Assembly (NCBI GenBank): GCA_977020255.1
Contig: CDROCS010003447.1
Location: 62,001 to 126,000 of the forward strand
From: Obrimoposthia wandeli
Taxonomy: Eukaryota
DNA: 64,000 bases
Direction of reading: 5' to 3'
The position numbers and the translations under genes were made by a program. This document shows positions 9,342-64,000 of this stretch, piece by piece (position 1 is the first letter of the stretch; each line of letters begins with the position of its first letter). The notes below the pieces were generated by a model that searched no databases, was not told the origin of the DNA, and saw only the letters and a program-made list of their open reading frames with translations.

Positions 9342-10214
9342 TCATGCACAACCTCAATCATGCACAACCTCGATCATGCACAACCTCGATCATGCACAAC
9401 CTCGATCATGCACAACCTCGATCATGCACAACCTCGATCATACACAACCTCGATCATGCACAACCTCGATCATGCACAACCTCGATCATGCACAACCTCG
9501 ATCATGCACAACCTCGATCATGCACAACCTCGATCATGCACAACCTCGATCATGCACAACCTCGATCATGCACAACCTCGATCATGCACAACCTCGATCA
9601 TGCACAACCTCGATCATGCACAACCTCGATCATGCACAACCTCGATCATGCACAACCTCGATCATGCACAACCTCGATCATGCACAACCTCGATCATGCA
9701 CAACCTCGATCATGCACAACCTCGATCATGCACAACCTCGATCATGCACAACCTCGATCATGCACAACCTCGATCATGCACAACCTCGATCATGCACAAC
9801 CTCGATCATGCACAACCTCGATCATGCACAACCTCGATCATGCACAACCTCGATCATGCACAACCTCGATCATGCACAACCTCGATCATGCACAACCTCG
9901 ATCATGCACAACCTCGATCATGCACAACCTCGATCATGCACAACCTCGATCATGCACAACCTCGATCATGCACAACCTCGATCATGCACAACCTCGATCA
10001 TGCACAACCTCGATCATGCACAACCTCGATCATGCACAACCTCGATCATGCACAACCTCGATCATGCACAACCTCGATCATGCACAACCTCGATCATGCA
10101 CAACCTCGATCATGCACAACCTCGATCATGCACAACCTCGATCATGCACAACCTCGATCATGCACAACCTCGATCATGCACAACTTCGATCATGCACAAC
10201 CTTCATCATGCACA
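9342..10214. repeat. 16-bp minisatellite (ATCATGCACAACCTCG), about 54 near-identical copies
   Basis: Read directly from the sequence. It accounts for the three overlapping 293-368 aa ORFs with a 16-aa period. Confidence 0.98.
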
Positions 10215-15659: not shown

Positions 15660-17640
15660 AGACAACGTTAGATGATGATTGAAATAACAAAAGGCAGCGC
15701 CAATATCTGATAAATGTGAAAATTGTTGTAAAGATTCAGAGCACAAATTGTCAAATATTCCCTCACTCTGTTTGTTATTTGAGAATTTCTTGGCCAATTT
15801 GTAGTCGTCATCGTTGCTCCTAAGATGCATATACATGCTCACTGCACCAGGCTCAAACTGTTTTGATAAAATATACTTTTTGATAATATGTAGAATCTTG
15901 AATTTAATTCAAACATTGATGTGTAGCCAATGGAGCTTCATTAAATGATCACTTGTGCTACACATATTGCAATAAAATAATAACTGTTAATATTAATTAG
16001 ATTAAATATAATTACAGAAATAAGAGAAAATATTCTAATAATTTTTTAGAATTTTCAGTAAAAGTTGAAACATTTTAAATTCTGGCTTCATAATTAGACT
16101 TTGATTTTAACTAAATTTAAGTTTTATTTGTGAAAAATTAAAATTTTACAAAAATATCAATCAAAAACTTTCTAAATATCATTCTGGAAATCCAGTTAAA
16201 TTTCTAATGCTCAAATTTTATTTGATTGATATAAATATTTAACTTAATAAGGTTTATCAAAATTTGTACCGCTCGTTTGATTTTCACTCGACGCTTCTTT
16301 GTGCACATCTGTGTATGTTTGTGGTATTGTTGGGGTTGTTAAACTATATTATTGTTAGAGTTAAATTTAAAAGAACATTAAAAATAGCAATATTTCAATT
16401 ACTATCCTTAAAAAATTTTAAGCAAATAAATAACAATTACTTAAGTTATGCATAAAGTTTATACCAAAATACTTATTAAAATGTTATGAAGTGACTCACA
16501 ATAGAGAATAATAGTTTTAAAGTATTAATGAATTTAGTGTAAAATTCCCATTTTTACGAATAACTTTTTAAAGAAAGACCTTAGATCAAATTCTGAACTT
16601 CACATGAGTAAATGAGTAATGAAATATCGATTTATTTCATGTATGTTCGAAAGATTTTCAACTTTCGAATTAAGAAAGATCCACAAAAATGTAATTTTTG
16701 TTAATTAAAACGTTAATTAATAAAACTTTAAAGAAGAATTTCTAGACATCTAAAAGTCACAAATAAATGAACAAAACATCATTTTAAAGTATAAATTATT
16801 TCTATTTGAAAAATGTACTTGAAATTGCCCTATATTTTGATCATTGAATTTTGATAAAGAAGTTAAAGTAAAACTTGAAATTGCCCTATATTTTGATCAG
16901 GGAATTTTGATAAAAAGAAGTGATTTTAATAAATATCACCCGATATATAGAACTCGTAAATTGTTAGGACATCTCCATTTGTGTGAAGTTTAGTGAAGTG
17001 AATTTAGGACTAGTTGTTGTACTTTTTAGAAACGTAGTTACAGTGAATTAGAGAATAAAATTTCCTACAAGTTAGACGGTGTTGTTTTGAACAAATCCCT
17101 TGAAATCAAGTAAGTATCAACTACTCCATACATTACACCACATTAAGGGAATTTTTCAGCGCCCGCATACACAACTCCTCACACATCTCCACAACACCAA
17201 GAAAAAACAAACCTTCAAATTAGAATTTGAGACAGGTAATAAAATCTAAATAGGCCACAAACAACTGCAAGCCCTATTGCTATAGAGTTCACGTTGGGGG
17301 CCTCTATCCGAGGATCTATTTAAGAGTTTCGAATAGAAACCCCAACATCTACATAAAGATTAGGGGGATATAAAAACCCTTTTTTTTTGAGAAATAGACA
17401 GAATAAAATATTTCTGGACATCGTGACTAGCCTCCTACAAAAAATTCGACAGGTCATTATTTTATTTTTGTAATTTTTATTCTTCAATATTATAACGTTT
17501 TTAAAAATATTGAAATTTTGATTTGAGAACTCTCACAATTGTTAGCCCCTGGTCATTTTTTGTATGTAATAAAATTATATTACAAATTTTGTATTTTCTT
17601 TTTATATTTAAATTAAACCCCACATTATTCACTAAAATTT
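15660..17640 (-). mobile_element. Decayed L2-clade LINE copy (RT to 3' end), interrupted by an LTR fragment
   Basis: Collinear inverted match to 37300-38990 (16355-16820 vs 37845-38305, 17500-17640 vs 37380-37480, 15680-15960 vs 38660-38890). Boundaries approximate. Confidence 0.7.
16965..17347 (+). mobile_element. 3' fragment of the Gypsy-type LTR family (copy D)
   Basis: Contains AATAAAATTTCCTACA (17054), TAGGCCACAAACAACTGCAAG, CACGTTGGGGGCCTC and terminal GAAACCCCAACA at 17347, as in copies A, B and C. Confidence 0.8.
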
Positions 17641-31700: not shown

Positions 31701-33001
31701 CGGATGGCGGGAAAGATCCCAAAGAGAGGGAGAGGGAGACAGTCATTTGGGGGATATAATCCCAACTTAACTCTCATGGGAATTGCAAACTGTGATTATT
31801 TTGCTGGTTTGCTAGACTAATGAATATTGTCGACTAAAGAGGTGTCATTTGGCAATCTAGAATTATCTGCAGTTATGGTGTTCTTTGTACTCGAATGTTT
31901 GACTTGCCAGCTGCTTTAGTTGGTTCAATAATCTTGGGTCAAGTTCGGTTTGTGTGAAGTTGAGCCACGAGTAATATGTATGAGTCTGGCGAATACAGTC
32001 ATGGAAGGTGACGATGTGTAGGTGTATATGAAGAGGGAGGCAGATGCAATATCTGCAGGTCACCATGGTCTCCTCTTCTCCCGCTGCTGATTACGATTGC
32101 TGCTGCAGCGCTCCCTATTCCTCTCTCCGTGCTCGCGATTTGGAGAAATACTCTGGTCACCATATCCCCGTCACTCTATGCATAACTTTCCTTGTTCTGA
32201 GGCAGATTTTCAGATTTAACTGCATACTTAATATTTGTCCCAACAGCGTTTACATTTTCTAGTACTACTTGAGAAAGAAAACTTGGACAAATAAATACCT
32301 TCTAAAGTTGGGCTTACACTGAAAAGTGTATGAAACAAAGAATGATCGATTTTCTTTTTGATTTTTCTCCTAGTTCATGTGTAATTCCTGTGAGCCCTGC
32401 AGGACCGAAGTTGCATATGTGCAATATGAACAAAATCACGAATAGCGTACTAAACATGTTTCTAGAAGTTTCCAATTGAATTATCATTTGATAATAGCAT
32501 CCAATCTAATTTTAGTATTATATACATGGTATTGAAGGTCATATATGCTTTATGTAAGTCATTGCGATTTCTCATGTTAAGCAGTACTTTAAATGTGAAA
32601 ACAGGAACTCTTTTGTAATGTATAACTCTTTCTCCTTACACTTTTGTCGAAACTCTAAGCAAAATTGTTTTTATGATCATAAAATATTTAGAAAAATAAT
32701 TATTTTTCGGAATTTTCGTGTTAAAAAACTTCAAATATGAAATATTTTGAACCTCTTAACTTTTTCTAGAAAGAATAAAAACCAAATTAATTTTGTAATC
32801 CGCTCATTTACTTATCAATACACAAATTAATATTAAAAAATCATGAAAAAGGCATTTTTCTTACATTAGTCTTAAAGGGATTAAATAAAAATGAAATATA
32901 TCTCTTCTCGAAAGGTTTTCGTATGACCTACACAGAAACCTATTAATGTGTCACTGCTTCTCACCCAATGTTTCAATGCTGCTCTACATATGCGTGTGTG
33001 T

Positions 33002-33328
33002 GTATGAGTGTGTCAGATGCTCACCCAGTGAGGTTGTGGTTGTGCCTGTGTGTGTGGGTGTATGAGTGTGTCAGATGCTCACCCAGTGAGGTTGTGGTTG
33101 CGCCTGTGGGTGTGTGGGTGTGTGGGTGTATGAGTGTGTCAGATGCTCACCTAGTGAGGTTGTGGTTGAGTGTGTCAGATGCTCACCTAGTGAGGTTGTG
33201 GTTGGGCCTGTGGGTGTATGAGTGTGTCAGATGCTCACCCAGTGAGGTTGTGGTTGCGACTGTGGGTGTGTGGGTGTATGAGATGGTCAGATGCTCACCC
33301 AATGAGGTTGTGGTTGTGCCTGTGTGTG
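33002..33328. repeat. Variable-length GT-rich tandem repeat with a 36-bp core, six copies, directly after the GPCR stop codon
   Basis: Core GAGTGTGTCAGATGCTCACCCAGTGAGGTTGTGGTT recurs six times between 33002 and 33328. The GPCR TAG is at 33329-33331. Confidence 0.92.
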
Positions 33329-34046
33329 CTATTTGAGACTACTGCTTGCGTGTCGGATAAAGACGCGGTGGCAATGGCAGCGCATCAGCCGCTGGTAGGT
33401 CTGCCGAAAGACGGGGTTGAAAAAATGGTACACGATGGGGTTGAACATGGACCCCGAGTAGCCGACCCACTCGAAGATGAGGAGGATGCGCTCGGCGATC
33501 TCGGAGCTTGATGAGGAGCCGAGCTTGACGAAAAAGTCTACTAGGTAAGTGACAAAGAAGGGCAAGTAACAGAGTACGAAGAGAAGAAAGAGAATGCCGA
33601 GAGTCTGGACGGCCTTGCGAGAACGGTTAATCTGCTTGAGCTGGCGCTCAGATTCTTTCTTCTTGGAGAAGAAGGAGTTGTAGACGTCACCGTTGCTGGT
33701 GTTGGTGGTCTTAGGAGAGCTGGGGTTGCGGAATGAGCGGCGGAGCGATGTAGTGGACGAGGTTAGCGGGTTGGAGAGGATGCGGCAGACGGGGGGCCCC
33801 AGGTTGTCACCGCGGAATGAGACCTGTCTGTGCGGGAGTGAGGCGGGCGGTGGTGTGGATGATGCCGAGGAGTTGATAATGACGGGAGAGGCGATGTCCA
33901 GGTTGGAGGGAGATGGAGATAACAAGATCGACCGGCTCATTGAGTTGCTGGTGATACTGCTGCGATTGTGGGTGGATGAGGCTCGCTGTAGCATTGGTGA
34001 CAGCTCCACCACATCGGATTGGGCTGGCTGTGGTTGGCTCTTGATC
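33329..34046 (-). CDS. HTR2-like: 5-HT2-like aminergic GPCR, last exon (ICL3, TM6, TM7, helix 8)
   Basis: Acceptor CCCCATACAG| at 34046 (phase 2). Encodes ...RKAVQTLGILFLLFVLCYLPFF...EWVGYSGSMFNPIVYHFFNPVFRQTY..., with NPxxY and a C-terminal Cys. Stop at 33329. Confidence 0.93.
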
Positions 34047-37000
34047 CTGTATGGGGATGATTTAGGTCAAGTGAATTTACCTCCATTTATGAAGGTCTGG
34101 CAAAATCTGGGTTATGTGAACTTTGGTCGTGAACACATGAAGATGAAGTGATTGTCAAAACCAGATTTAAACAATCTTAGATATTCAAAATTGAAATGAT
34201 CATAACAGGAAATGCAACATTTTAATTTAAATTCTTTCACCAGTTCGAATAAAGTGTGAGTTATATTCCGACTGAGGGTTTTATTCGAGAACTTTCTTTA
34301 ATTTATGGATCCTATCAAAATAGTTTTCAGTCAAAGAAATTTTCCCACTGACAAAATATTTTGGTTCAGTTTTTGTCGAAATTCTTCCAAAATGTACAAT
34401 TTAGTTAAATGATATTTCAATGTTAAATTTCATAAATTCAAGAAAATTCTTTCAGTAAACATGCTTAGACGATTCGTACTCCATCAACCCCATTAACAAC
34501 TTTGGTAAATTAGAAGTCGTGTCAGAGTATGTTAGCAGACAAATAAACATTCAGAGTAAACTTCAATATGACACAAACTCCTTGATATTTCTACAGAAGG
34601 AAAAACCAGTGTAATTGGAAAAGAAGCACATGCACGGTGAAATTAGAATTAATACTGAAAAACTGTCATAAATCATAGATTAAATTATAAAATAAAATCG
34701 GTAATATATTTAACAATTAATTTACTTAAAAGGACAAAAATTTGAAATGAAAAAAAATTATTTGTTTTTGAAGTCATAAAAATGGAAGGATATTTGTGTC
34801 AAGCTATTCTTCAGCCCAGCTGCTTCAGCCCATGATATCTCAGCATTATTAAATATGAAAATTTATATTCCTACAAGTCATACGAAAAATAGAAGAAACA
34901 AATTGCTGTTTTAAAAACGAATTTATTCCATTAAGAAGATGAAATGTAAAAATTGCTCTAAAGCAGCCTTCTATAAAATGCAATTAAAACTTTCTTTTAT
35001 TTCTCAGATTCTACCCATATTATGAATGGGTTCATAAATTGCGAGTGATTTCTTTCTCTGCATTGTTTCTTCTTCTAAGTATTTTGTAACAATAACTGCC
35101 ATATTTTTAAAGAATAATTTATTTTTACACCTGTTTTATTATTATTTATTTAACTGCAGTCCCTACTAAGCCATATTTCAACCCGACTAATTTACTTTTA
35201 ACGTATTTTAATAAAAAATTACATTAACCTATGAAATACAAACTTCAACTTGACTTTCTTTTTTTCTAAAATTCGTTTTATCATTTATTTGACATTTATA
35301 AACAAATGCTGAAGATTGATAAAATACTATTTACTATTAACAGTAAAATAATGTTTAGCTATTTTTATATGTTCTCAAATCATTTTAAATAACTATTCAT
35401 TATTGTAAAGAAAATTTTATCTTTCTAATTAACAGAATTTTAAATAAATTTCTAAATTAATATAAGAATCAATTTAAATTTAAAAAAAAATTTATCTACA
35501 ACGTAACACTATTGTAAGAATGATTTAAAGTACATATTTCCAATACATACGGATTTTACTTTCCATATTGAGAACATTTCTTTTAATTCTCTTTTATTGT
35601 AAAAGTAAAAATCTTTATAAAAGCCAATGTGAAATTCGCAAATTCGTTATAAGAATATTTTGTTATCCAGGGCGAATCAAAGATAGGGCGTGGAGGGTGT
35701 GTCACGGCCCCCTCCAAATTCTGCATCAAAATCTCTTCATTCGTACTAAGAATTTTACCGTTTCTTAAGCCGACTTTTTCAATTCGATAATTTTGTTGAG
35801 TCCACTCCAAGAAATTGTATGGAACATCATATATTTATATTCTCTTAATTCATGTATTTTGGAATTTTGCTACATCTGTATATAGTTCAATTATCGCAAA
35901 CTCTGTAAGTTCTTCTACCTGCTATACCCATGTATAGTACTAATTTTGTTGTAGAAATTTCAAAAGTGCAATTGAACAGCCACACCCCCTCTTCTAATTG
36001 AACTAGCCACCACTGCCAATGGTTATATATCAATATGTTGAGTTAATATGCACACTCAGACTTGTAGATGAACTTGATATTTCAGTCCCGGCTCAGTCCG
36101 GTGTGGTTCGAGATATGAACGAGTTTGTATCTACAGACTCACCACGACTCATATCCAGATCGCTACAACCGCCGTCGAGATAATTGAGCTTTCTGAGTCG
36201 ATATCTTGAATGACATTAAATTAACTTAGTCGGAGACGATTTCGAAATATGAAATAATCAGCCCGAAACTGAAACTATTATAAGGAATTTATGAAATAAA
36301 CTATTACATATTACTGCAGCTATATATCATCGAGCTCAATGTGAACTGACTTTTAATGTAGAGGTCCATAAACTATTAATATACTTCAAAATAGAAATGA
36401 CTTAGAAAATCTTAGAATGGACGAATAGTGATAAATATAAATTTTATTTCATACATCGTGACAGGAAGTCCATTTCTGAGCGTGCTAGATATCAGTATAA
36501 TGCCAGACAAATGTTTGATCTTTAACTGAGCATTGGGCATGATTGGGCAAATGTACAGGCGTTCCTCAATGTTCCACAAGTTAGACGATTTCGATAAAAA
36601 TCTAGAAGAGTAGTCATGAGCCTTTGAAATTAATAAACAGTGTTCATAGATTTTACTTACTTCAAAAATCAAGTTGTATACCAGTCAAAGTTGAGAAATT
36701 TTGTTGTTGCTTAACTGCTTTTAAATAGTCAAAATTTCAAATGAAATTAATTTTGAAAGAACTTTTGTTACAATTGTGTATAAATGTTATAATTAAAGAT
36801 TAGCTGTAAATTTTTTCATATAAATACTTTTTAATTTCAGAACTTCTGATGCTTTTGGAATCTTTGTAATTAACTTATAATTTGAAATAATACAATCTTA
36901 AACAAGAGTTTTTAATTATTTTTTGTTACTTCATTTATTCTGTATTAAATATATTAAGCAAATATTAAGCACAGATTCATCGTAAACTTATTATTATCAA

Positions 37001-41400: not shown

Positions 41401-41643
41401 TGACGAAAAATAATGCATAGAAGAAACTTCTCGAGACTATGCCAAAAGAGCATAGAATGATGTTTCAGTACAACATAAGAAGATATGAGGGAACGAGTTC
41501 AAAGGAAGGGAATATGTAGAAGAATGGGTCAACGCAAATGGGACTAATATTGTGGATTTTATAGTTTATGTGTTCAATCAGGCTTCGAATAATCGTGTAA
41601 CAGTTAATCAATTCCCTTTGTGGTGGTGGGGCAGAGGACGCAC

Positions 41644-42014
41644 CGGAGAATGTGAAGAGCAGATCGATTGGGGAGTGTCGCGGATGTTGATGGAGTGCAC
41701 AGACCGGCGGTGGCAGCAACGATGCTGGTCTGCAGACGGGGCTTGAAGACGAGGGAGGCCACGGCATTGGAATAGAGGCTGGCCTCGGCCTCGCGACGCT
41801 GTACATGCAGGATGTTGACGGTGAGCACGTACGTGGCACTCATGATGCCCAGGGGGATGAAGAAGGTCACGACGGTCGCGATCAGGATGAAGTACGCGTT
41901 CTGGGGCCCGCAGCCCTTGAAGGAGGACGAATGCTCGTGCTGCTTGTCGAGCTCCATCGCCAGCAAGAACAACGGGCAAGCAATACTGAAGGGGATCGCC
42001 CACGCACAAAGAAT
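41644..42014 (-). CDS. HTR2-like: 5-HT2-like aminergic GPCR, middle exon (TM4, ECL2, TM5, start of ICL3)
   Basis: Acceptor TTTCCATGCAG| (phase 0) and donor CG|GTGCGT (phase 2, matching the last exon). Encodes ILCAWAIPFSIACPLF...KGCGPQNAYFILIATVVTFFIPLGIMSATYVLTVNIL. FFIPL.IM..TY.LT is typical of 5-HT2 receptors. Confidence 0.92.
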
Positions 42015-42449
42015 CTGCATGGAAAGGATAACCCTCAAATAGGTCATGCAGTCACAGTCTGAAATCGATGAATTATAAAGCAAATTATAGGTTACAAAAT
42101 CTAGAATGCATATTATATAACCTGGTATTCATAAATATGAAGATGCATTGACATTGATTGTTCTATCGATCGAACTGGAATATAATATGATCTGAGTTGA
42201 ATTTACCATGAGTACTGTGGGTACTTAAGTGAAGTCTGTCACCTTATAATGAAGATGCAACACGATTCCTACCCAAATAATGAAAAACATGCAGTTGTCT
42301 GTTGAGTAATAGCCATGCTAATCAAATGTAGCACCGATACTTGGTATTCCAGATTAATGCATTCGAAAAAGGAAGCAAATTGAATAATTGGTAGGGAGTA
42401 TTTTTCAAGAAATTCTGGGAAAAGGTAAGTCTGATAAGAAAGGCAAAGG

Positions 42450-51867: not shown

Positions 51868-53794
51868 TGTTGGGGTTTCTATATGAAACTTATAGATCCT
51901 TTTGAATGCGGAGGGCCCCAACGTGAGTTCTTATAGAAGCAGGACTTAAGGATGGTTGTGGCCTACTTAATGTTATGCTTGCCTGTCTCAATTCTTATCT
52001 GAAGGTTTTTATTGTGTCTTAATCTGAAGGGTTTAAAACAATGCTTGCTAATGTAGGAAATCGTTTATTTTCAATACACTAGACTAAAACAATACAATAC
52101 GTTTACGTACGTATTTTCTAAAAAGCTGTAATAAAATTCCTAAGACTTCTGTAAGTCTCTACACAAGTGGGGATGAACCACGTATCGATTTTACGTTAAG
52201 GTCGGTTAGTTTATTTGAGTCTTTACTCTAACTTGTGGATAAACTCCGGGCACAGATTTTGAAGAGCTGGTTGCTCTAAAATAGGGAACGAATTTAGAAA
52301 GCTTATCTCTCTAATATGGGTGATTGGTTAGTCGCTAGAGTCCTTGCTCTAACACTTAGTAGTTTAATATTCAAAATCAATTTATCAAATTCGGTTTGCA
52401 AAGGCAACACTTAGTAGTTTAATATTCAAAATCAATTTATCAAATTCGGTTTGCAAAGGCAACACTTAGTAGTTTAATATTCAAAATCAATTTATCAAAT
52501 TCGGTTTGCAAAGGCAACACTTAGTAGTTTAATATTCAAAATCAATTTATCAAATTCGTTTTGCAATGGCAACACTTCGTAGTTTAATATTCAAAATCAA
52601 TTTATCAAATTCGTTTTGCAAAGGCAACACTTCGTAGTTTAATATTCCAAACTAATTTAACCAAATTCGTGGGTATTTATACCTTTAATTTACTGTGGTT
52701 ATTAATCCTCCTCGTCTCCCGGCTTAAGTCTCTCGAATTGGCGAGACGGAAATGGCGATATGAAAAACTGCTGGACGGCAACCGTGGAATTGAGCAGCGG
52801 AACTGACTGTGAGACGGAACAGTGGAATTGACTGCGAGACTGGAACTGCAACTTTGAACTGAGCTGTCTGATATCGGCAGTGAGATCTGGTTGTATTGAA
52901 TTGTTGCTGCGAGACCTGCGCGTATTGACTTAACTTTGGTGGCGATATTCTTGCTCCTCTTACCTTTGGTTCTTTTCGTCTATTGTCTTCTCCTGGGCAA
53001 TATTGATTCTTCTCTTTTTTAGCAAAATTGTGGCCACCGCGATATTGGTGAACTGCTATTTATATTCCACGATTGATTTTCAGGTTGGCGCTGGCTCGAT
53101 GCTAGTTGGCGCGATGATGACGAATCGATTTGATGCGGCGCTGTGGATAGCTCGATGACTGCTGCTGCTGTGTTGCTGCTTGGGTCGATGACGATGCGAA
53201 TCGACGATACTGTGGGAACTGTCAAATGCATGTCAGTTCGCCCACTAATTGAAGCGCACTTACCTTGATGCTGGAATTGATGACTCCGCTGCAACTGTTC
53301 TGGCTCCCACTGAGATTTACCGTTGTTGCTGTATTGCTGCTGTATTGCCGCTGCGACACTGTGGGAACTTGTTGCGGCGCTGTTGTATTCTGTCCAAATA
53401 TGACAGTTATCTTACTAATTGCTTTTTTCTTACCTTGATGCCGTTTGATCAATCCGGCTGGCTCCCACGATACAATTACAAGATTTTCTTCTTCGTCCAA
53501 TTTCTTGTAAATTAATTAATTGATTCGTTAATTTCTTCTTTGCCTTTTCTTCTCGTTTTCTAATTTCTTGATTAATTCTTTTTCTTTGAGGGCCCTTAAT
53601 AATAACTCAAACTCCCATACATACAGCGCACTACACACGACCTTCGTGGTCCTTAATATTTAATTTTACTCGTAATTTTCCAATTTAATACTAATATTTA
53701 ATTTTTTATTTTAATTATAACCTTGCTTTCAAGGATTTTCTTTTTATATAAATTAGGTAAATTATCTAAACTTTATCAAATCCTAATCCCAACA
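51868..53794 (-). mobile_element. Solo LTR, Gypsy-type family copy A (1927 bp)
   Basis: The minus strand starts TGTTGGGATTAGG and ends GAAACCCCAACA, with a perfect TSD ATAT (51864-51867, 53795-53798). It has AATAAA..TTTCCTACA near 52052-52069 and GGACCACGAAGGTCGTG near 53640. Confidence 0.93.
52351..52670. repeat. 55-bp tandem repeat (~5.8 copies) inside LTR A
   Basis: Unit AACACTTAGTAGTTTAATATTCAAAATCAATTTATCAAATTCGGTTTGCAAAGGC starts at 52351, 52406, 52461, 52516, 52571 and 52626. Confidence 0.95.
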
Positions 53795-54819: not shown

Positions 54820-55419
54820 TTTGTATAAATGGTCAGAAATTGATACTCCAAGTTCAATTAATTTAAGAAGAAAAGACGATAATGGAAGACTGGCAACGCA
54901 AAGATCTAAATCGAAGAAAGAAGACTGGATGTGTACATACAAGCTTTACAATAGTTTACTTCAGGCGCTAGGAAAGTATCACACTATTGAAGAATTCCGA
55001 AGGCACATCAAGATGTTCCTGTTTAGAAGATGCTGCAGTTAACTACTCAAAGTTGCTGATTTGTAGAGCGTCTTTGAATAATAATTCCCACATTTATCGA
55101 TAAATTGGCGCTGTATTAAAGATGTTCTTATTCAGAAGATGCTGCAGTTGACTACTCAAAGTTGCTGATTTGTGGAGCGTCTTTGAATAATTATTCCCAC
55201 ATTTATCGATAAATTGGCGCTGTATTAAAGATGTTCCTGTTCAGAAGATGCTACAGTTGACTACTCAAAGTTGCTGATTTGTGGAGCGTCTTTGAATAAT
55301 TATTCCCACAATTATCGATAAATTGGCGCTGTATTAAAGATGTTCCTGTTCAGAAGATGCTACAGTTGACTATTCAAAGTTGCTGATTTGTGGAGCGTCT
55401 TTGAATAATAATTCCCATA
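54820..55419 (+). mobile_element. L2/CR1-type LINE 3' end whose tail is amplified as a 109-bp tandem repeat (~3.8 copies)
   Basis: YKLYNSLLQALGKYHTIEEFRRHIKMFL is the LINE ORF2 terminus. GAAGATGCT recurs at 55026, 55135, 55244 and 55353. Confidence 0.8.
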
Positions 55420-56990
55420 ATTATTATGAAATTTGCTTATTTTGAAATATAATACATACATTAATTAATTAATTTTCAATAAAATGCCAAAAGTAGAAAC
55501 AGTAAGTTTATTTCAGAGAATATTTCACTGATTCCCCTTATCTCAAGCGGACCAACTTGATAGTATCAATATGTAACAAACTTTATGTAGTAGAATGCAA
55601 TAAGTATAATCTGGTACATTATAAATTGTATTCGGAGAAATAATTGATCGGAAGTGCCTTAATTTCAAATGAACTGAATGTAATTAAATATTTATTATAT
55701 GCACAGCGTAATTAAATGAGAAATCGAAGTGAAAATAAATTAAGGCTCTTGTTACTGTTTAAAACACTCCCGTTAACCTGATTTCTCGATATGGGAAAAG
55801 TGCACTTTCTGACTATCATCATCATCACCAAATTATAGGGAAATATTTCGTTAACTTTTGTAAGATCATTTATAAGAAATAAAACGAGCAATTTACACAA
55901 GACCGTTTTCATATATATTTCTAATGATACAAAATGTTCAATTTTATTCATTTTCTGACGTCTCACGGCTGTACAGGTTCGGATGAAAACTGCCTTTTTG
56001 AATGAAACTTATTCCATATGGTAGGAAGATGACAAATAGCATAAAATATATATATTGCTATTCTTGTGCTTCTTTCGCCATTTTGTACACATACCACTAA
56101 TATTTCTACAGCTTTACCTTCATTATCCTCTCCTCTTTTTCCGTTTAAGAGCAAACTTGGCATTTATTTGATAAAATATCTTCAATTTATTAAAATAACT
56201 CTCTCCTAAAAGTCTTTTAACTTTAAAATTCCTGATGACGATGGGACATTGTCTACCAATTTTTCTGCTCTTCTTTGTATTATTTGAGGAGAAGCATATA
56301 TTTCACCAAACGCATTTGTTTAAACTTCACGTGGTGTTTTGGGACGGCACTTGATCGCAATAAAACATTGAACTCATCAAACTTTTATTTTCAACTACAA
56401 TCTTTAATCAGTATCGAACACAAATTTTTTAATTCAAACCTTTTTCTTAACAACTTCAATAAATTATTTCTATATCTCCACCACCAAGGTCATTTCTTTT
56501 TAATATTTTTAAACAATTACTTTTTTAAGACCTTCACCACTATCTTCATTACCTACCCATCATCGTCATCATAATTATTACTATTTAATTTAGTTTATTA
56601 TTTAAAATATTTTAATATTTAACTTTATTTTATTAGATAATCACATGCTTACTTTTATTATTCAGCATGTGATTATCTACATCAATTAATTTCGTTCCAA
56701 AACGATATTCTTGAAATGTGAAGTTGTGTAGAAGATTTTACATTTTGACAACTAAAACTCTCATCAGACGTACACAATGATATATTTGGTTCATTAGCGG
56801 AAGCTTCTGTTAAAGCACCATATATTTTACTATTTGATGAATTTTAATTTTTTGGAAATAATGCTTATTATTAGCATTCACTTTAAAATATTAATTATGA
56901 AATATATTTCATTTTCTGAATTTATTTTGTTAATACACCCAATCAAATTGGTTAGCTCAATTGTAAAGCTGAATACCAATGACTGGATGT

Positions 56991-57490: not shown

Positions 57491-58160
57491 TTAAAGCATT
57501 TAATTAAGCACAAATAAACCCTAAAACTTAAACTTTCCGATTTTTTTCACCTCCTGACTCATTTTCTGCTCTATTTATGAATAAAAATTGAAAATATAAA
57601 AGTTAAATTACCTTTCCGTATCCATAGATGTGTTAAGGTTGAGAATTAAGAAAATTAAATATTTTAGTTGATTAAATACTAAAATAAAAATCCTTGAAAA
57701 CAAGGTCGAAAATTAAATTAAAATATTAATTTAAGTTTTAGAAGTAAAAATAGTGAAATATTAGGGTAAAATTAGGAGGACCACGAAGGTCGTGTATTAT
57801 GCGAAAATGTATAAAAGTTAAATTAATTAACCCAAAAGGGACAATTGCAAAAAGTAATTAAGGAAAATTAAGAAAGAAAAACGGTTAATTAAAACCGTCA
57901 ATCAAGAAGAAGAAAGGTAAGCACTTTTGCGTGCAATAACTAAAATTTATTTTTGCAGCTGTCAATTGATTGACATTGCATTATTCGCTCCGGTTTCGCT
58001 GAAGGAAGACTCAAAACAGCCGTCAACTGATTGACGTCCAGTGCCAATATATAAAGGCAGGGTTTCCAACTACAATCACAAATACGGGATCGACCACGGA
58101 ACCAGGTAGTGATTTGGTTAGAGTGGAGATAATTAATTTTATTGAAGGTCCCAGTCAACA

Positions 58161-59246
58161 TATATCCGAAAGTATATCCGAACGTATATCCGAAACGTAT
58201 ATCCGAAAAGTATAACCGAAAAGTATATCCGAAAGTATATCCGAAACGTATATCCGAAAAGTATATCCGAAAAGTGTATCCGAAAAGTATATCCGAAAAG
58301 TATAACCGAAAAGTATATCCGAAACGTATATCCGAAAAGTATAACCGAAAAGTATATCCGAAAGTATATCCGAAACGTATATCCGAAAAGTATATCCGAA
58401 AAGTGTATCCGAAAAGTATATCCGAAAAGTATATCCGAAAGTATATCCGAAAAGTATATCCGAAAAGTATATCCGAAAAGTGTATCCGAAAAGTATATCC
58501 GAAAAGTATAACCGAAAAGTATATCCGAAACGTATATCCGAAAAGTATAACCGAAAAGTATATCCGAAAGTATATCCGAAACGTATATCCGAAAAGTATA
58601 TCCGAAAAGTGTATCCGAAAAGTATATCCGAAAAGTATAACCGAAAAGTATATCCGAAAAGTATATCCGAAAAGTATATCCGAAAAGTATATCCGAAAAG
58701 TATAACCGAAAAGTATATCCGAAACGTATATCCGAAAAGTATAACCGAAAAGTATATCCGAAAGTATATCCGAAAAGTATAACCGAAAAGTGTAAAAAGT
58801 ATATCCAAAAAGTATATCCAAAAAGTATATTCGAAAAGTATAACCGAAAAGTATAACCCAAAAGTATATCCGAAAAGTATAACCGAAAAGTATATCCGAA
58901 AAGTATATCAAAGTATATCCGAAAAGTATAACCGAAAAGTATATCCGAAAGTATATCCGAAAGTATATCCGAAAGTATATCCGAAAAGTCCGAAAAGTAT
59001 ATCCGAAAAGTATATCCGAAAAGTATATGAAAAGTAAAAGTATCCGAAAAGTATAACCGAAACGTATATCCGAAAAGTATATCCGAAAAGTGTATCCGAA
59101 AAGTATATCCGAAAAGTATAACCGAAAAGTATATCCGAAAAGTATATCCGAAAAGTATATCCGAAAAGTATATCCGAAAAGTATATCCGAAAAGTATATC
59201 CGAAAAGTATATCCGAAAAGTATATCCGAAAAATATATCTGAAAAG
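58161..59246. repeat. 12-13 bp minisatellite (TATATCCGAAAAG and variants), ~1.1 kb, inside LTR B
   Basis: Read directly from the sequence. It explains all the FGYTFRIYFSDIL / KVYPKSISEKYIR ORFs. Confidence 0.97.
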
Positions 59247-59361
59247 AAGACAATATCGGGAAAGAAGACGATCCCACGGGCGCTCCACACGGATCTGCAT
59301 CAGACATCCCGCTAGTCGACGGAATCAGCGAGTAACTGGTAAGAACACAGACTAGGTTCAT

Positions 59362-59790
59362 TCATTGCCCCTAGTAGGCAATTAGGTTACTTTCATTACC
59401 CCTAGTTGGTAATTCTACGTTTAAAATAATAAACAAATTCATTACCCCTAGCTGGTAATTAGGATCTTTGTCTCTTTAGCACAATCATTGCCCCTAGTTG
59501 GTAATTAGGATCGGACCTTTATTCATTGTCCCCAGCGACAATTAGGAAACCTACCAGACGTTTTTCCCGTAAGATCATTGTCCCTAGCTGACAATTAGGT
59601 TCATTCATTGCCCCTAGTTGGTAATTCGGATAAATATTCATTGTCCCTAGTAGACAATTCGGTAAGACTCATTGTCCTCCAGCTTATAATACGGTTTGTT
59701 AATTGACCGTAATTGACTATTTGGAGTAAGTTTTTATTGTCATCTTGACAATTAGGTTTTAGGAGATCCCTTGTCTACAGTAGACAATTT
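59362..59790 (+). repeat. Array of about 11 short palindromic units (ATTRYC-N5-7-GRYAAT) with unique spacers, inside LTR B
   Basis: Stems start at 59364, 59395, 59441, 59487, 59525, 59577, 59607, 59640, 59671 (broken), 59736 and 59771. Confidence 0.85.
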
Positions 59791-60329
59791 GGGTCAAACA
59801 CACACAGAGAGAGTAAGGAACAAAGAAACATTTAGCCAGAGATAAGAAGTAGGAGCGAAGAAATTTAAGAGAGTTGCGTTATAGAGTAACCAACCTGAGT
59901 AAGAAGACTAAACCTAAGAAACTTAATCACCTGAACGTAAAATCGATACGTGGTTCATCCCCACTTCTTGTAGAGACTCACAGAAGTCCTTTAGGAATTT
60001 TATCATACTTTTTAGAAATACGTACATAAACGTATTGTGGTGTTAGTTACGTGAATTTTGAATAAACAATTTCCTACATTAGAACAAGTTGTTTTTACAC
60101 CCTTCAGACTAAGAGACATCAAATCAAATACCTTCAGATAGTACAAGAGATTAGGCAACCATAACACTAAGTAGGCCACGACCAACTTTAAGACCTGCTT
60201 CTAATCGAACTCACGTTGGGGCCCTCCGCACACTAAGAGGCTCTATACCAAGTTTCGTATAGAAACCCCAACAGATGCATCCGAAATGTCAGATAACATA
60301 TAAATAACTGCATTTTCGTCGTTTGCTAT

Positions 60330-61663
60330 TGTTAGGATTAGGATTCTAATAATTATGAAAAATTAATTATTTATATATCAAAATAAATCCTTGAAAACAA
60401 GGTTAAAAATAAAATAAAATTTTAAAATAAGAAATTAAAAAATTAAATAACAAAATTATTAAGAATATTTGGGACCTTGGAAGGTCATGTTTGATGCGTA
60501 GTATATAGTAAATATTAAATCTAGTAAAAGGGCCAGTTAGAGAAAATCCAACTTAATTAAGAAGAATCAGAGACAATTAAAAAGCACTCAAAGAAAAACG
60601 GACTCCGAAAGCAGTCCATTTGACCAAGAAGAAGAGCCGCTGAGAAATAAACCAGCCGCCAGACAGTTTCAATTAATAACTGGGAGCGAAGCAGCTTTCA
60701 TTGTGATCCCGGTAAGTGGAAATTGCAACAGTGCACTTAAACTAATTGTTCTCATTCAGATCGGCTGGCTCTTGATAAAAGTGGAAAATACAGGAATTGT
60801 TCGCACAACATTTCAGAAATCAGTTAAAAGTTAAAATCAGTTGCAACCTAAATCGGAGCCGACTAAAGCGAAGTGAAAAAACAAAAAGGTAACGATTTAG
60901 AAAAGAAATTCATTATTCCGATTCCAGAAATACCCTATATCACCGAAAGCCGATATTCTCCAACGCAATCACAGAGGCCGAAGACCGGATTTCGCAGCCA
61001 AACGAAGCAGACTACGGATTGGAGGAAGGTAAGAAAGGCAAATTCATTTATCGAATTGAAAAAAATGGACCCATAATTTCGTTTATCATATATTTATCGA
61101 ATTGAAAAAGAATTGACCTATAATTCCGTTTGTCATAAATATCGAATTGAAAGAGAATTGACCCATAATTTAATAGTAATTTCGTCGACAAGAATTGTCC
61201 CGTATTTTTAGAGCAATTAACTCTATAAACTTTACAACTTAACTTGCCCATATTTTAGAGCGAAAAGCTCTCTAAAATCAACGAAACAGACAACGCCCAT
61301 ATTTTTAGAGTAAAGACTCCAGTGAATAAAAACCCCAAAATTAAAATCGATACGTGGAACATCCCCACTTGTGTAGAGACTTTGTAAAAAGTATTTAGGA
61401 TTAGTTTTGAAATTTTTAGAACGTGTTTAGAACGTAACTTAGAGTGTTTTGGAGAATAAAAGATTTCCTACAACTAGACAGCGTTGTTACAGACCCTCAC
61501 ACTTAGACATAACAAACCTTCAAATAAGAATTGAGACAGGCAAGCACAACTTAAGTAGGCCACAAACAACTGCAAGTCCTGCTGCTATAGAACTCACGTT
61601 GGGGCCCTCCATCAGAGGATCTATATCTAAACTCCAAAGTAGTTTCATATAGAAACCCAAACA
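60330..61663 (+). mobile_element. Solo LTR, Gypsy-type family copy C (1334 bp), flanked by a 56-bp direct repeat
   Basis: Starts TGTTAGGATTAGG and ends GAAACCCAAACA, with AATAAA at 61455. 60274-60329 matches 61664-61719 at 54/56. It contains a ~46-bp repeat in three copies at ~61048-61170. Confidence 0.9.
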
Positions 61664-61893
61664 GATGCATCCGAAATGTCAGATAACATATAAATAACTG
61701 CAGTTTCGTCGTTTTCTATTATGGTATTCACTTTTCGTTATGGTATTCATTTTGTTTAATCTTCATATATATTAAAATCACATACAAACTTTTTCTACCC
61801 ATGTAGGTTAGTGTATGTATGCGTCCATATATTTATGGAATTGATTTTGCGCCATGTTATTCATTTATGTTGAATGGTAAGTTTTTATTAGTG

Positions 61894-62080
61894 TGTTAGG
61901 ATTAGGTTTTGTTTAAAATTAAAAATAAATAATTGTTTTATAGTAAAACGAAAATCCTTGAAAGCAAGGTTAAGAATTAAATAAATTTTAAAATCAAGTT
62001 AAAATATTAAAATTAAAATAAGAATAAATATTAGAAGACCACGAAGGTCGTGTATAATGCGTTGTATATAAAGATATTAA
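61894..62080 (+). mobile_element. 5' ~185 bp of another family LTR (copy H), joined directly to internal gag-like sequence
   Basis: TGTTAGGATTAGG at 61894, ATCCTTGAAAGCAAGGTT, GACCACGAAGGTCGTG and TATATAAA (62065). Similarity to the other LTRs ends abruptly near 62080. Confidence 0.85.
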
Positions 62081-64000
62081 AGTGTTACTAGCAGTATCGG
62101 ATACAAATGATTTTGATAACGCCGTGCGAAAGGCGAGAGAAATTGAGAAAAATATAAAAAATAACGCAGCATTGGCAATTTACGCAATGACTGCAGGTGA
62201 CGACGATAAGACAAAGGTATTCGTGAATAAAACAGAACCGAGTAATTTTCAGAATCGAAATTATGGACAAAATAAGTTTGAAAAAGTAGATGAATCCAGT
62301 AACGGAAACAGAGATAATTTCCGAAGTAGGAATCGAGATGATTCGAGAGGTAGAAATAATAGTGAGTCTTGGAACAGGAATCGAGATGATTCAAGAGGTA
62401 GAAATAGTAATGATTCCAGGAATAGATTTAATAGAGATAATTCAGGAAATCGCCAACCTTGGAGAGGAGACGATAGGAATTATAACGCAAACAGAGGAGA
62501 GCGAAGTGACTCTCGATTTGGAAATAATACAGGAAGTAGTGACGGAAGATTCAATAATCGAGGAAGCGGTTTTGAATCGAATTTCCGAAGAAATGATTTT
62601 AGAGGACGATATGATAATAGACAGAATAGTCGTCGAGTACAGTTCGAAGATGAACAAAATAAGATATATATTCGAGGGAGAATAATGTGTTACACGTGTA
62701 AACAAATGGGTCACTATTCGAGAGATTGTACGAGAAGTAAAGAGTTCGGAACTAACAGATTTGGAAATAATAATTTCGGTAATAATAATTTTGGAAATAA
62801 TTATAGAGGATATAATTCACCCCCGCCATGGAATAGAGGTGGTGGATATACTCCACAGCCATGGAGACCGAATAATCAGTATACAGATAGACAACAGTCA
62901 CCAGGTAGATACAATAACTATGCAGACAGACAGCAAGGAGCTGAGAGATACAATAATTACGTAGGACAGCAAGGAGCTGACAGATATAATAATTCCGGTC
63001 GATATAATAATAATAATGTTGACAAGACAAATAGTCGCGAGAGTTCGCCGAAACCGAAAGGAAATTTTAGTTATGTAAACGATGACAGCGATAGGAATCG
63101 CGAGACCGAGCTTCGACGCGAAATAGATTTTGAAGATAGTGATAGTAAATTTGAACGAATGTTGGGAATAATTAAAGATTCACCACATACAAAGATGGCG
63201 AATTCATCTACGTTGTCGAAACAAGAAAAAAGTCTACACTCGAGAGAAGAGATGAATGATTTAATGAATCGAATACTAGAAGCGTATGAGACGCCAATAG
63301 AGAAAACGTGTAACGCACAACCTATGACTGATCATGTAGAAGCAGCAAGAAATGCTACGAGTATGGAAAATGTAAAAAAGATAATTAGCGAAGCTAAGGA
63401 GACGTTGAATCAACCGTTAGACGACACGAGTGAAGTTTTGGCCAAATTACAAACAATTAAAGTGCACAGATTGGAAGAAGTACGAGCGGAATTGGTTAAA
63501 CATAGTCATGATAACTTGGGTTACAAAGAAGTAACACGAGGATTATTGAAAGGATATGGTCGCTACGTACAGAGATCAAACCAAAAAGGAACGATGAAAA
63601 TTTCACTTCGATTAATTTCCGGACAGATTATACATGAAAAACTTAACGTGTATCAAACAATGAAAACTATAAGAAAAAAGTTGGCCGAGAAACTTGAAAT
63701 TGATGGAATGAACATGTTGTTCCATTATAAAGGAAGATCACTAGATGATGAGGACGTACCAGTCGAGTTTGGATATCCGATAGGAAATGAATTAGAGGAA
63801 AAAATTGATGTCATCACTGTAGGACGTCAGGAGTTAGTAGATAATGAAGGATTAACTGAGATATTAAACTCGGCGTTAGAAATGATAAAAACGCCTATAG
63901 AAATTTTAGACAGTTCAAGCGAAAGCGGAGATAATGATGTAGCTGAAGCTTGGAACAAGACATCCACACCAGAACCGTACGTAGCTGAATTACAAGACGT
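62058..64000 (+). CDS. 5'-truncated retrotransposon Gag-like polyprotein with CCHC zinc knuckle and ubiquitin/SUMO-like domain; open to the window end
   Basis: No stop in frame from 62058 (after TAA at 62055) to 64000, about 647 codons. The first in-frame ATG is at 62187. CYTCKQMGHYSRDC lies at 62688-62729 within R/N/D/G/Y-rich low-complexity sequence. The UBL is at 63594-63824. Confidence 0.88.
63594..63824 (+). other. Ubiquitin-like (beta-grasp) domain within the Gag-like ORF
   Basis: MKISLRLISGQIIHEKLNVYQTMKTIRKKLAEKLEIDGMNMLFHYKGRSLDDEDVPVEFGYPIGNELEEKIDVITVG aligns without gaps to ubiquitin 1-59, identical at M1, I3, G10, I13, T22, K29, K33, I36, G47, L50 and D52. It has SUMO-like P56/G60/IDV features and no C-terminal GG. 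Confidence 0.78.

What the first reader, a model, noticed from the sequence alone, without database searches (positions are those of the whole stretch)
63594..63824. Retrotransposon Gag-like ORF carries an in-frame ubiquitin/SUMO-like domain
Seen: an ORF absent from the ORF track runs from 62058 past 64000 with no stop. It has a CX2CX4HX4C knuckle (62688-62729) and, about 290 codons later, a 77-aa block aligning gap-free to ubiquitin 1-59 (11 identities, plus many conservative pairs at core positions such as L5/V, L17/V, I26/V, L30/I, F43/L, Y45/F, F59/Y). Its DDEDVPVEFG...IDV tail looks SUMO-like, and it ends VG-R rather than GG. Established: canonical Ty3/Gypsy Gag is capsid plus nucleocapsid, with no UBL. 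Pestiviruses and baculoviruses have captured ubiquitin-family sequences, engineered Gag-ubiquitin fusions can recruit ESCRT, and some giant flatworm Gypsy elements carry accessory domains, so novelty must be checked. Inference: this LTR family has captured an integral, probably non-conjugatable UBL. It might act as a proteasome, ESCRT or SIM-binding handle, or as a decoy against SUMO/ubiquitin-dependent silencing.
Basis: partly seen in the sequence, partly recalled or inferred. Interest (0 to 1): 0.85.

Follow-up and report, generated by a model that had tools for sequence, protein, structure and literature searches.

The report
Ubiquitin-like domain in zinc-knuckle ORF
A long open reading frame at the edge of the window encodes a retrovirus-type zinc knuckle followed by a real but divergent ubiquitin-like domain that cannot be conjugated, an arrangement already reported once, in the giant 'Burro' retrotransposons of planarian flatworms.

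Summary
Frame +1 is open from 62058 to the window end: 647 codons, against at most 134 in shuffles. It contains a CCHC knuckle at 62688-62729, which passes the Pfam cut-off. The 77-residue block at 63594-63824 is a genuine ubiquitin-family beta-grasp. Pfam ubiquitin is its top hit but falls below the cut-off. A profile of bona fide UBL repeats scores it 34.9 bits, against at most 10.3 in 20,000 shuffles. HHalign gives 95.6%, and an MSA-guided AlphaFold model has the bb-a-bb-a-b order. It ends TVG-R, not GG, so it is an integral domain.

No capsid domain, LTR pair, PBS, protease or RT is visible, and no second copy could be found in any searchable collection. Retroelement identity is therefore likely but unproven.

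The novelty is limited. Arkhipova & Yushenova 2019 (PMC6431247) already report a SUMO-like domain (PF11976) downstream of the Gag knuckles in the planarian Burro/GYPSM1 polyprotein. I call this a new member of a known kind, of moderate interest. Organism and family remain unidentified.

The parts
62058..64000 (+). Open reading frame of 647 codons, open at the 3' window end. Purine-rich coding strand.
   Evidence: no stop; shuffle maximum 134 codons. (AT skew +0.25 to +0.30 and GC skew +0.22 to +0.35 across this stretch; the high AT skew is shared with parts of the upstream repeat region, the GC skew is unique to the ORF).
61894..62081 (+). Repeat 'unit2' (about 190 bp), with a TATA-like box TATATAAAG at 62065-62073. 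Its similarity to three other copies in the window ends between 62061 and 62081, just where the ORF opens.
   Evidence: Other copies: 57651-57803, 60330-60519 and 53797-53618 (minus strand).
62187..62189 (+). First in-frame ATG (codon 44). About 35 unique codons upstream of it are already open.
   Evidence: sequence. From base composition, the chance of 35 open codons is about 0.06. This suggests a 5'-truncated coding sequence or an internal exon rather than a 5' UTR (inference).
62238..62687 (+). R/N/S/D/G-rich low-complexity (RG-like) region, aa 61-210, with in-frame 48-nt repeats.
   Evidence: composition; repeat family D6.
62688..62729 (+). CX2CX4HX4C zinc knuckle of nucleocapsid type.
   Evidence: zf-CCHC above the gathering score; the five best PDB hits are all retroviral NC/Gag (RSV, EIAV, MoMLV), but weak (best E 0.017).
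62736..63077 (+). N/G/Y/R/P-rich low-complexity region, aa 227-340, with 33-39-nt in-frame repeats.
   Evidence: repeat families D10, D15.
63078..63593 (+). Acidic, probably helical linker, aa 341-512. No recognisable family.
   Evidence: no significant hit. (helices predicted, at very low confidence).
63594..63824 (+). Ubiquitin-like beta-grasp domain, aa 513-589. It has a roughly 4-residue insertion before the last strand and ends TVG-R (no GG).
63897..63938 (+). SIM-like motif IEIL followed by DSSSESGDND, about 25 residues after the UBL.
   Evidence: A motif of at least the scoring threshold used (7 of 10 D/E/S in the flank; the observed motif scores 8) appears in 6% of shuffles, so this is suggestive only.

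Best explanation
This is the 5' part of a long, intronless retroelement polyprotein ORF. Either this copy is 5'-truncated or its upstream part is spliced.

It encodes an RG/N-rich RNA-binding region with one nucleocapsid-type CCHC knuckle, then a helical linker, then an integral ubiquitin-family (type II, non-conjugatable) beta-grasp domain.

The nearest described architecture is the ORF1 polyprotein of the giant planarian Gypsy elements Burro/GYPSM1. There a SUMO-like domain lies downstream of the Gag knuckles.

Shown: the ORF, the knuckle, the UBL fold assignment and the absence of a GG tail.

Inferred: lacking a GG cleavage and conjugation site, the domain stays part of the polyprotein and acts as a non-covalent docking module. 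Candidate host partners are proteasome or ESCRT ubiquitin receptors, or Ubc9 and SIM-containing SUMO-pathway proteins. It would thereby tune the stability, trafficking or silencing of the element's ribonucleoprotein.
For: - ORF: real and far longer than chance. It is also more than 2.5 times longer than any other non-repeat ORF in the 64-kb window, whose host GPCR gene is split into short exons.
- Composition: the coding strand is strongly purine-rich; the positive GC skew is confined to the ORF.
- Setting: the ORF abuts a mosaic of dispersed repeats and satellites.
- Knuckle: passes the Pfam cut-off, and its best PDB matches are all retroviral nucleocapsids.
- UBL: Pfam ubiquitin then UBX are the top families. 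PDB hits are all ubiquitin, ISG15, SLD or SUMO. The only hits in 1.84e9 proteins are UBL-repeat proteins. HHalign gives 95.6%. The UBL-repeat HMM scores 34.9 bits against 10.3 or less in 20,000 shuffles.
- Structure: the AF2 model built with a UBL alignment has pLDDT 74-86 over residues 8-70 and the beta-grasp strand order. Its Foldseek top hits are ubiquitin variants, ISG15, Ddi1-UBL and SUMO1 at target-normalised TM 0.7-0.8.
- Precedent: Burro ORF1 carries Gag, then CCHC knuckles, further domains, and a Ubi2/SUMO-like PF11976 domain (PMC6431247).
Against: - No capsid (retrotrans_gag) signal in the ORF or in 6.5 kb upstream.
- Only one knuckle, whereas Burro has 2-3.
- No MATH domain between knuckle and UBL.
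- PF11976 itself does not hit.
- No LTR pair, PBS, protease or RT can be seen, because the window ends 58 codons after the UBL.
- No relative of the ORF exists in any searchable protein or contig collection, so multi-copy status and conservation of the UBL are untested.
- The AF2 model depended on an alignment of known UBLs and is partly circular. The single-sequence model was useless (pLDDT 34).
- The proposed function is pure inference.
Confidence: 0.55

Rival explanations
1. A host gene, or a domesticated Gag-derived gene. It would encode an RNA-binding CCHC protein with an integral UBL, transcribed from a repeat-derived TATA promoter (unit2). It would start at the ATG at 62187 or be joined to upstream exons.
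For: A TATA-like box lies at 62065-62073, about 115 nt before the first ATG. Other unit2 copies are followed by short stretches that end in GGTAAG donor-like sites, as if unit2 were a promoter module. No capsid, LTR or pol is seen. Only a single copy is present in the window. The ORF is intact, although the neighbouring repeat copies are only 73-76% identical to each other.
Against: No homologue exists in 1.84e9 or 5.8e9 proteins, whereas the neighbouring GPCR finds relatives easily. An uninterrupted exon of 1.9 kb or more is atypical for this window. The purine-rich strand bias (positive GC skew confined to the ORF) and the NC-like knuckle ranking point to a retroelement. The frame is open for 35 unique codons before the ATG (P about 0.06).
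Confidence: 0.25
2. An ORF1-type protein of a 5'-truncated non-LTR (LINE-like) element, or of another unclassified retroelement, rather than an LTR/Gypsy element.
For: There is an abrupt junction with the upstream repeat at 62061-62081 and the frame is open from the junction, as expected for 5' truncation. Several LINE clades have gag-like CCHC knuckles in ORF1 (established knowledge). The upstream promoter-like units are repeated in tandem, reminiscent of LINE 5' monomers.
Against: LINE ORF1 proteins normally end soon after the knuckles. Here the frame continues for more than 420 codons with a linker and a UBL. No UBL is known in a LINE ORF1 (my knowledge; literature searches found none). No RT or endonuclease is visible.
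Confidence: 0.1
3. The ubiquitin resemblance is convergent or chance similarity in a helical or low-complexity protein, and there is no beta-grasp domain.
For: The Pfam ubiquitin score is 17.9 bits, below the 25.4-bit gathering score. Individual domain scores against database UBL repeats are 12 bits or less. Single-sequence AF2 gave no confident fold. The MSA-guided model is biased by its alignment.
Against: Independent methods all converge on the same 70 residues and the same superfamily. No shuffle out of 20,000 reaches a third of the real score. The hydrophobic core pattern aligns gap-free.
Confidence: 0.08

Closest known systems
Burro / GYPSM1 giant Gypsy-like LTR retrotransposons of dugesiid planarians (Jurka 2007; Grohme et al. 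2018; Arkhipova & Yushenova 2019, PMC6431247)
   Same: A single huge polyprotein in which a Ubi2/SUMO-like domain lies in frame downstream of the Gag CCHC knuckles. Coiled-coil (Smc-like) sequence lies between them. The genome is AT-rich and tandem repeats lie in the flanking non-coding parts.
   Different: Burro has a typical retrotrans_gag domain and 2-3 knuckles, and in S. mediterranea a MATH_TRAF_C domain before the UBL. Its UBL matches PF11976. Here there is no capsid, one knuckle, no MATH and no PF11976 hit. No Burro sequence was available for direct comparison, and the organism of the window is unknown.
Integral SUMO-like domains of Rad60/Esc2/NIP45 (Pfam Rad60-SLD)
   Same: A beta-grasp without a GG tail, built into a larger protein. 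The acidic ...DEDVP.EFG...IDV tail resembles the SUMO/SLD C-terminal half. NIP45 SLDs and SUMO2 appear among the PDB hits. The best database hit, P0001, is a Rad60-SLD repeat protein.
   Different: PF11976 does not score the block. Ubiquitin and ISG15 score better than SUMO. Binding to Ubc9 or to SIMs is untested.
Ubiquitin insertions in cytopathic pestivirus (BVDV) polyproteins, and baculovirus v-Ubi
   Same: Host ubiquitin-family sequence captured by a virus and expressed inside, or next to, viral proteins. These are among the top structural matches in the viral library.
   Different: Those copies are near-identical to host ubiquitin and keep the GG. In BVDV the GG serves as a host-protease cleavage site. 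The domain here is highly divergent (about 20% identity) and lacks GG.
Ddi1/Ddi2 (UBL, helical domain, retroviral-type aspartic protease)
   Same: A UBL placed N-terminal to a retropepsin, if a protease follows beyond the window. The Ddi1 UBL is among the top Foldseek hits (rank 6).
   Different: Ddi1/Ddi2 are host genes with no knuckle. Whether a protease follows here cannot be seen. In Burro the UBL and the protease are separated by BCL2-like and Env-like regions.
RBBP6/Mpe1 (DWNN ubiquitin-like domain, CCHC knuckle, RING)
   Same: A host protein that combines a UBL fold and a CCHC knuckle.
   Different: The order is reversed (UBL first). There is no DWNN or RING hit here.

Membership tests
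Ubiquitin-like beta-grasp superfamily (Pfam ubiquitin clan) | Significant match to a curated family profile | tested here: inconclusive
   PF00240 is the top hit at E 0.0027-0.0042, but 17.2-17.9 bits is below the gathering score of 25.4. UBX is second. A custom UBL-repeat profile gives 34.9 bits against 10.3 or less in 20,000 shuffles. HHalign gives 95.6%.
Ubiquitin-like beta-grasp superfamily (Pfam ubiquitin clan) | beta-beta-alpha-beta-beta-(3-10)-beta topology | tested here: met
   The AF2 model built with alignment A3 has E8-14, E20-26, H31-42, E51-53, E56-58, H64-67 and E82-84, with pLDDT 74-86 for residues 8-70. Foldseek target-normalised TM is 0.7-0.8 to ubiquitin, ISG15 and SUMO1. Caveat: the alignment consisted of known UBLs, the last strand is low-confidence, and the single-sequence model failed.
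Conjugatable modifiers (ubiquitin, SUMO, NEDD8, ISG15) | C-terminal Gly-Gly at the end of the last strand, exposed by processing | tested here: not met
   The block ends ...KIDVITVG-RQELV and the frame continues. It is therefore an integral (type II) UBL.
SUMO / Rad60-SLD (PF11976) | Match to the PF11976 profile | tested here: not met
   PF11976 is not listed at E<=10 for any of the three query lengths, nor at E<=1 for the 97-aa piece. Only indirect support exists: the best library hit, P0001, is a Rad60-SLD repeat protein.
Ty3/Gypsy (Metaviridae) Gag | Capsid domain (retrotrans_gag / Arc-like CA) | tested here: not met
   No such hit in the ORF, in its first 70 residues, or in plus-strand ORF fragments from 55.5 to 62.1 kb.
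Ty3/Gypsy (Metaviridae) Gag | Nucleocapsid CCHC knuckle(s) | tested here: met
   One knuckle, with zf-CCHC above the gathering score. The best PDB matches are retroviral NC proteins.
Ty3/Gypsy (Metaviridae) element | PR-RT-RH-IN downstream, two LTRs, PBS and PPT | not testable with these tools
   The window ends at 64000, 58 codons after the UBL. No other copy could be retrieved. The upstream repeats do not behave as a simple LTR, because their homology stops 10-15 nt after the TATA-like box.
Burro / GYPSM1 | Sequence similarity to GYPSM1/Burro1-4, and a polyprotein of more than 4,800 aa with Gag, 2-3 CCHC, Smc, (MATH), SUMO-like, BCL2, Env, PR, dUTPase and RT-RH-IN | not testable with these tools
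   No Burro sequence is held in any searchable collection. Only the published domain order could be compared. The order knuckle, helical linker, UBL is compatible. The knuckle number and the missing capsid are not.

The most novel reading that the evidence does not exclude
The ORF belongs to a lineage independent of Burro: either a different retroelement family or phylum, or a domesticated Gag-derived host gene. That lineage has fused a nucleocapsid-type RNA-binding module to a non-conjugatable SUMO-like domain followed by a phospho-SIM-like motif (63897-63938). The pair would act as a decoy or adaptor for the SUMO-dependent transposon-silencing machinery, or for Ubc9. This would mean recurrent, convergent capture of UBLs by retroelements.
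Probability: 0.12. Interest if true: 0.75.

Novelty: new member of a known kind. Interest (0 to 1): 0.4.

Why it matters
Integral ubiquitin/SUMO-like domains in retroelement polyproteins are documented only by one sentence of HHpred annotation for planarian Burro elements, and nobody has tested what they do.

A second, compact example would give a tractable construct for testing the function. It consists of a knuckle, a linker and a UBL within 650 residues, with a possible SIM next to it. Such a construct could show whether these domains recruit proteasome, ESCRT or SUMO-pathway partners, or blunt SUMO-dependent silencing.

If the element turns out to be Burro itself, the finding is a rediscovery and adds little.

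Tried and rejected
1. Single-sequence AlphaFold of aa 449-647: pLDDT 34, unusable.
2. Homologues of the ORF:
   - phmmer against 1.84e9 representatives found only two UBL-repeat proteins.
   - The word-index search with aa 341-647 and with the 199-aa piece found none.
   - Peptide-pattern scans of metagenome and viral contigs found none.
   - A DNA pattern for the upstream repeat in metagenome contigs found none.
   - tblastn against the window found only self.
3. Organism identification through the neighbouring GPCR: the best relatives are only 44-51% identical, and the records carry no organism names. A literature search for the satellite units gave irrelevant hits.
4. Capsid search in the N-terminus and upstream fragments: nothing.
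5. Rfam and tRNA scans, to look for a SINE or PBS donor: nothing.
6. Reading the upstream unit1/unit2 repeats as a 5' LTR: rejected as a simple model. The copies share homology only up to 10-15 nt past the TATA-like box, the sequence after it differs between copies, and no TGG-type PBS follows.
7. The bacterial promoter/terminator scan is not meaningful for this eukaryotic sequence.
8. Grohme et al. 2018 could not be read because it is not held.
Full report
**What is there.** Translating window 62058-63998 on the + strand gives 647 codons without a stop. The preceding codon is TAA, and the frame runs off the window. That explains its absence from the mechanical ORF list. In 2,000 shuffles of the same bases the longest open frame averaged 66 codons and never exceeded 134. 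The two other frames carry 43 and 112 stops. The next longest non-repeat ORF anywhere in the 64-kb window is 245 codons. The coding strand is purine-rich: AT skew is +0.25 to +0.30 and GC skew +0.22 to +0.35. The positive GC skew is found nowhere else in the last 12 kb, while comparable AT skew also occurs in parts of the upstream repeat region.

**Anatomy of the protein.**
- aa 1-60: a short mixed segment. The first Met is at codon 44 (62187).
- aa 61-210: an R/N/S/D/G-rich region with in-frame 48-nt repeats.
- aa 211-224: the knuckle CYTCKQMGHYSRDC.
- aa 227-340: an N/G/Y/R/P-rich region with 33-39-nt repeats.
- aa 341-512: an acidic, probably helical linker with no family match.
- aa 590-647: an acidic tail.

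The knuckle passes Pfam's cut-off for zf-CCHC. Its five best PDB sequence matches are all retroviral nucleocapsid or Gag proteins, from RSV, EIAV and MoMLV, although the best E-value is only 0.017.

**Is the block a ubiquitin-like domain?** Several independent lines agree that it is.
- Pfam: the ubiquitin family is the top hit whichever query length is used (E 0.0027-0.066), and UBX is second. The score of 17-18 bits is below the gathering score of 25.4.
- PDB sequences: phmmer returns 34 sequences at E<=10, and the great majority are ubiquitin, ISG15, NIP45 SUMO-like domains or SUMO2. The best single-domain hit has E 6e-4. The printed alignment to ubiquitin 1-53 is gap-free with 11 identities.
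- Representative proteins: an exhaustive phmmer of aa 341-647 against 1.84e9 proteins returned just two proteins. Both matched on aa 512-580. Both are arrays of 8-10 bona fide Rad60-SLD/ubiquitin domains. Per-repeat scores are small, 12 bits or less, so the reported E-values are inflated by summing over repeats.
- Profile test: an HMM built from 14 of those repeats (A2) scores the block 34.9 bits, and 20,000 composition-matched shuffles reach at most 10.3 bits. HHalign gives 95.6% over 69 gap-free columns.
- Structure: single-sequence AlphaFold failed (pLDDT 34). With alignment A3 (the block plus the 14 repeats), the model has pLDDT 74-86 for residues 8-70 and the order b1-b2-a1-b3-b4-3(10)-b5. 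Its best PDB matches are ubiquitin variants, ISG15, the Ddi1 UBL, NEDD8 and SUMO1, at target-normalised TM 0.7-0.8. In the viral library the best matches are baculovirus v-Ubi, the ubiquitin inserts of BVDV polyproteins and giant-virus UBLs. This model is partly circular, because the alignment consists of UBLs.

I put the probability that this is a true beta-grasp UBL at about 0.9.

The last strand (KIDVITV) follows an insertion of about 4 residues. The domain ends TVG-R with the frame continuing, so it has no Gly-Gly and is an integral, non-conjugatable UBL.

A specifically SUMO-like assignment is not supported by Pfam, since PF11976 gives no hit. The acidic DDEDVPVEFG...IDV tail and the best library hit do lean that way.

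Ubiquitin's Ile44 is His here (alignment), so the canonical hydrophobic patch is not conserved.

**Is it a retrotransposon Gag?** This is likely but not shown.

In favour:
- the nucleocapsid-type knuckle flanked by RG-rich sequence;
- the purine-rich coding strand;
- an uninterrupted ORF of at least 1.9 kb, in a window whose host gene (a rhodopsin-type GPCR on the minus strand) is split into short exons;
- the position inside a 6-kb mosaic of repeats and satellites;
- the absence of any cellular homologue in 1.84e9 and 5.8e9 proteins.

Against:
- no capsid domain in the ORF, in its first 70 residues, or in upstream fragments;
- a single knuckle;
- no recognisable LTR pair or PBS;
- the window ends 58 codons after the UBL, so protease and RT cannot be checked.

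**The upstream junction.** Immediately upstream lies 'unit2', a repeat of about 190 bp that occurs four times in the window. It ends in a TATA-like box (62065-62073). Its similarity to the other copies stops between 62061 and 62081, exactly where the frame opens. The other copies continue into weakly related sequence of 110-210 nt that ends in GGTAAG. The ORF copy does not. About 35 unique codons are open before the first ATG, which base composition alone would give with a probability of about 0.06. The simplest readings are a 5'-truncated coding sequence joined to a repeat, or an internal exon with a possible acceptor at ttactag|CAG near 62091.

**Other copies.** None was found in the window, in metagenome or viral contigs, or in the protein collections. 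Copy number, conservation of the UBL and dN/dS are therefore untested. The organism could not be identified.

**Comparison with what is known.** Arkhipova & Yushenova 2019 (PMC6431247) describe the ORF1 polyprotein of the giant planarian Gypsy elements Burro/GYPSM1, which is 4,873 aa in Schmidtea mediterranea and 5,140 aa in a Dugesia tigrina relative.
- It begins with a typical Gag, followed by three or two CCHC knuckles.
- It also contains AIR1- and Smc-like regions and MATH_TRAF_C, which is absent from ORF1 in D. tigrina.
- It contains a 'Ubi2/SUMO-like (PF11976)' domain between MATH_TRAF_C and a BCL2-like domain.
- An Env-like region, PR, dUTPase and RT-RH-IN follow.

This was the only paper in the library that links PF11976 with retrotransposons. 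Other searches for UBLs in transposon proteins found nothing.

An in-frame UBL downstream of Gag knuckles in an AT-rich invertebrate genome therefore has a published precedent. The domain order here (knuckle, helical linker, UBL) is compatible with it. The missing capsid, the single knuckle, the missing MATH domain and the lack of a PF11976 hit are differences. Some of them could be due to 5' truncation and divergence. No Burro sequence was available for a direct test.

Other comparators share single features only:
- integral SUMO-like domains of Rad60/NIP45, which lack GG;
- BVDV ubiquitin inserts and baculovirus v-Ubi, which are captured but keep GG;
- Ddi1, which has a UBL before a retropepsin;
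- RBBP6, which has a UBL and a knuckle in reversed order.

**Mechanism (inferred).** Without a GG the domain cannot be released by ubiquitin- or SUMO-specific proteases or conjugated. It should remain part of the polyprotein, or of a cleavage product, and act as a docking surface. From what integral UBLs do in general, the candidates are:
- proteasome or ubiquitin-receptor binding, as in Rad23, Dsk2 and Ddi1;
- Ubc9 or SIM binding, as in Rad60 and NIP45;
- a late-domain-like handle for ESCRT, given its position after the nucleocapsid.

A SIM-like motif, IEIL followed by DSSSESGDND, lies about 25 residues downstream (63897-63938). A motif of at least the scoring threshold used arises in 6% of shuffles, so it is a lead and not evidence. 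I favour a SUMO/ubiquitin-pathway adaptor role but hold it with low confidence.

**Verdict.** The claimed novelty is reduced by the Burro precedent. I rate it a new member of a known kind, with interest 0.4.

Noticed in passing
window 58161-59246: A 13-nt satellite (TATATCCGAAAAG), 85 copies at 89% match, on the A-rich strand about 3 kb upstream of the ORF.
   Followed up: partly
window 59353-59665: Seven copies of a 30-46-nt repeat with a palindromic core (CATTGCCCCTAG..GGCAATTAGG) that looks like a binding-site array (family D4).
   Followed up: no
window 59938-60330, 61342-61720, 52231-51868 (minus), 17194-17347: Dispersed repeat 'unit1' (about 360 nt). Its conserved 3' end holds a small hairpin, GTTTC-rTATA-GAAAC, followed by CCCCAACA. 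In two copies an 80-nt stretch across its 3' junction is 95% identical, while the rest is about 73% identical. Its class is unknown; there is no Rfam or tRNA match.
   Followed up: partly
window 57651-57803, 60330-60519, 61894-62081, 53797-53618 (minus): Repeat 'unit2' (about 190 nt) starts TGTTAGGATTAGG, contains a hairpin AAATCCTTGAAARCAAGGT, and ends in a TATA-like box. Three copies are followed 110-210 nt later by GGTAAG, as if unit2 were a mobile promoter plus first exon.
   Followed up: partly
window 33332-34066 and 41607-42128, minus strand: Exons of a rhodopsin-family GPCR (7tm_1; TM3-5 and TM6-7 with NPIVY) with a long Ser/Pro-rich third loop. The best database relatives are only 44-51% identical, including one from Capitella teleta.
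   Followed up: partly
window 9342-10214: A very homogeneous 16-nt satellite (TCATGCACAACCTCGA), 54.6 copies at 99% match. It is open in all three plus-strand frames.
   Followed up: no
window 32991-33328: A GT-rich minisatellite of 52-60 nt (GC 0.44, strong GC skew), directly next to the 3' end of the GPCR gene.
   Followed up: no
window 55010-55424 and 52351-52669: Two further tandem arrays: a 109-nt unit x3.8 at 95% match and a 55-nt unit x5.8 at 96% match. The second lies between the minus-strand unit2 and unit1 copies.
   Followed up: no
window 63897-63938: A SIM-like motif (IEIL followed by DSSSESGDND) just after the UBL. An equally good motif appears in 6% of shuffles.
   Followed up: yes
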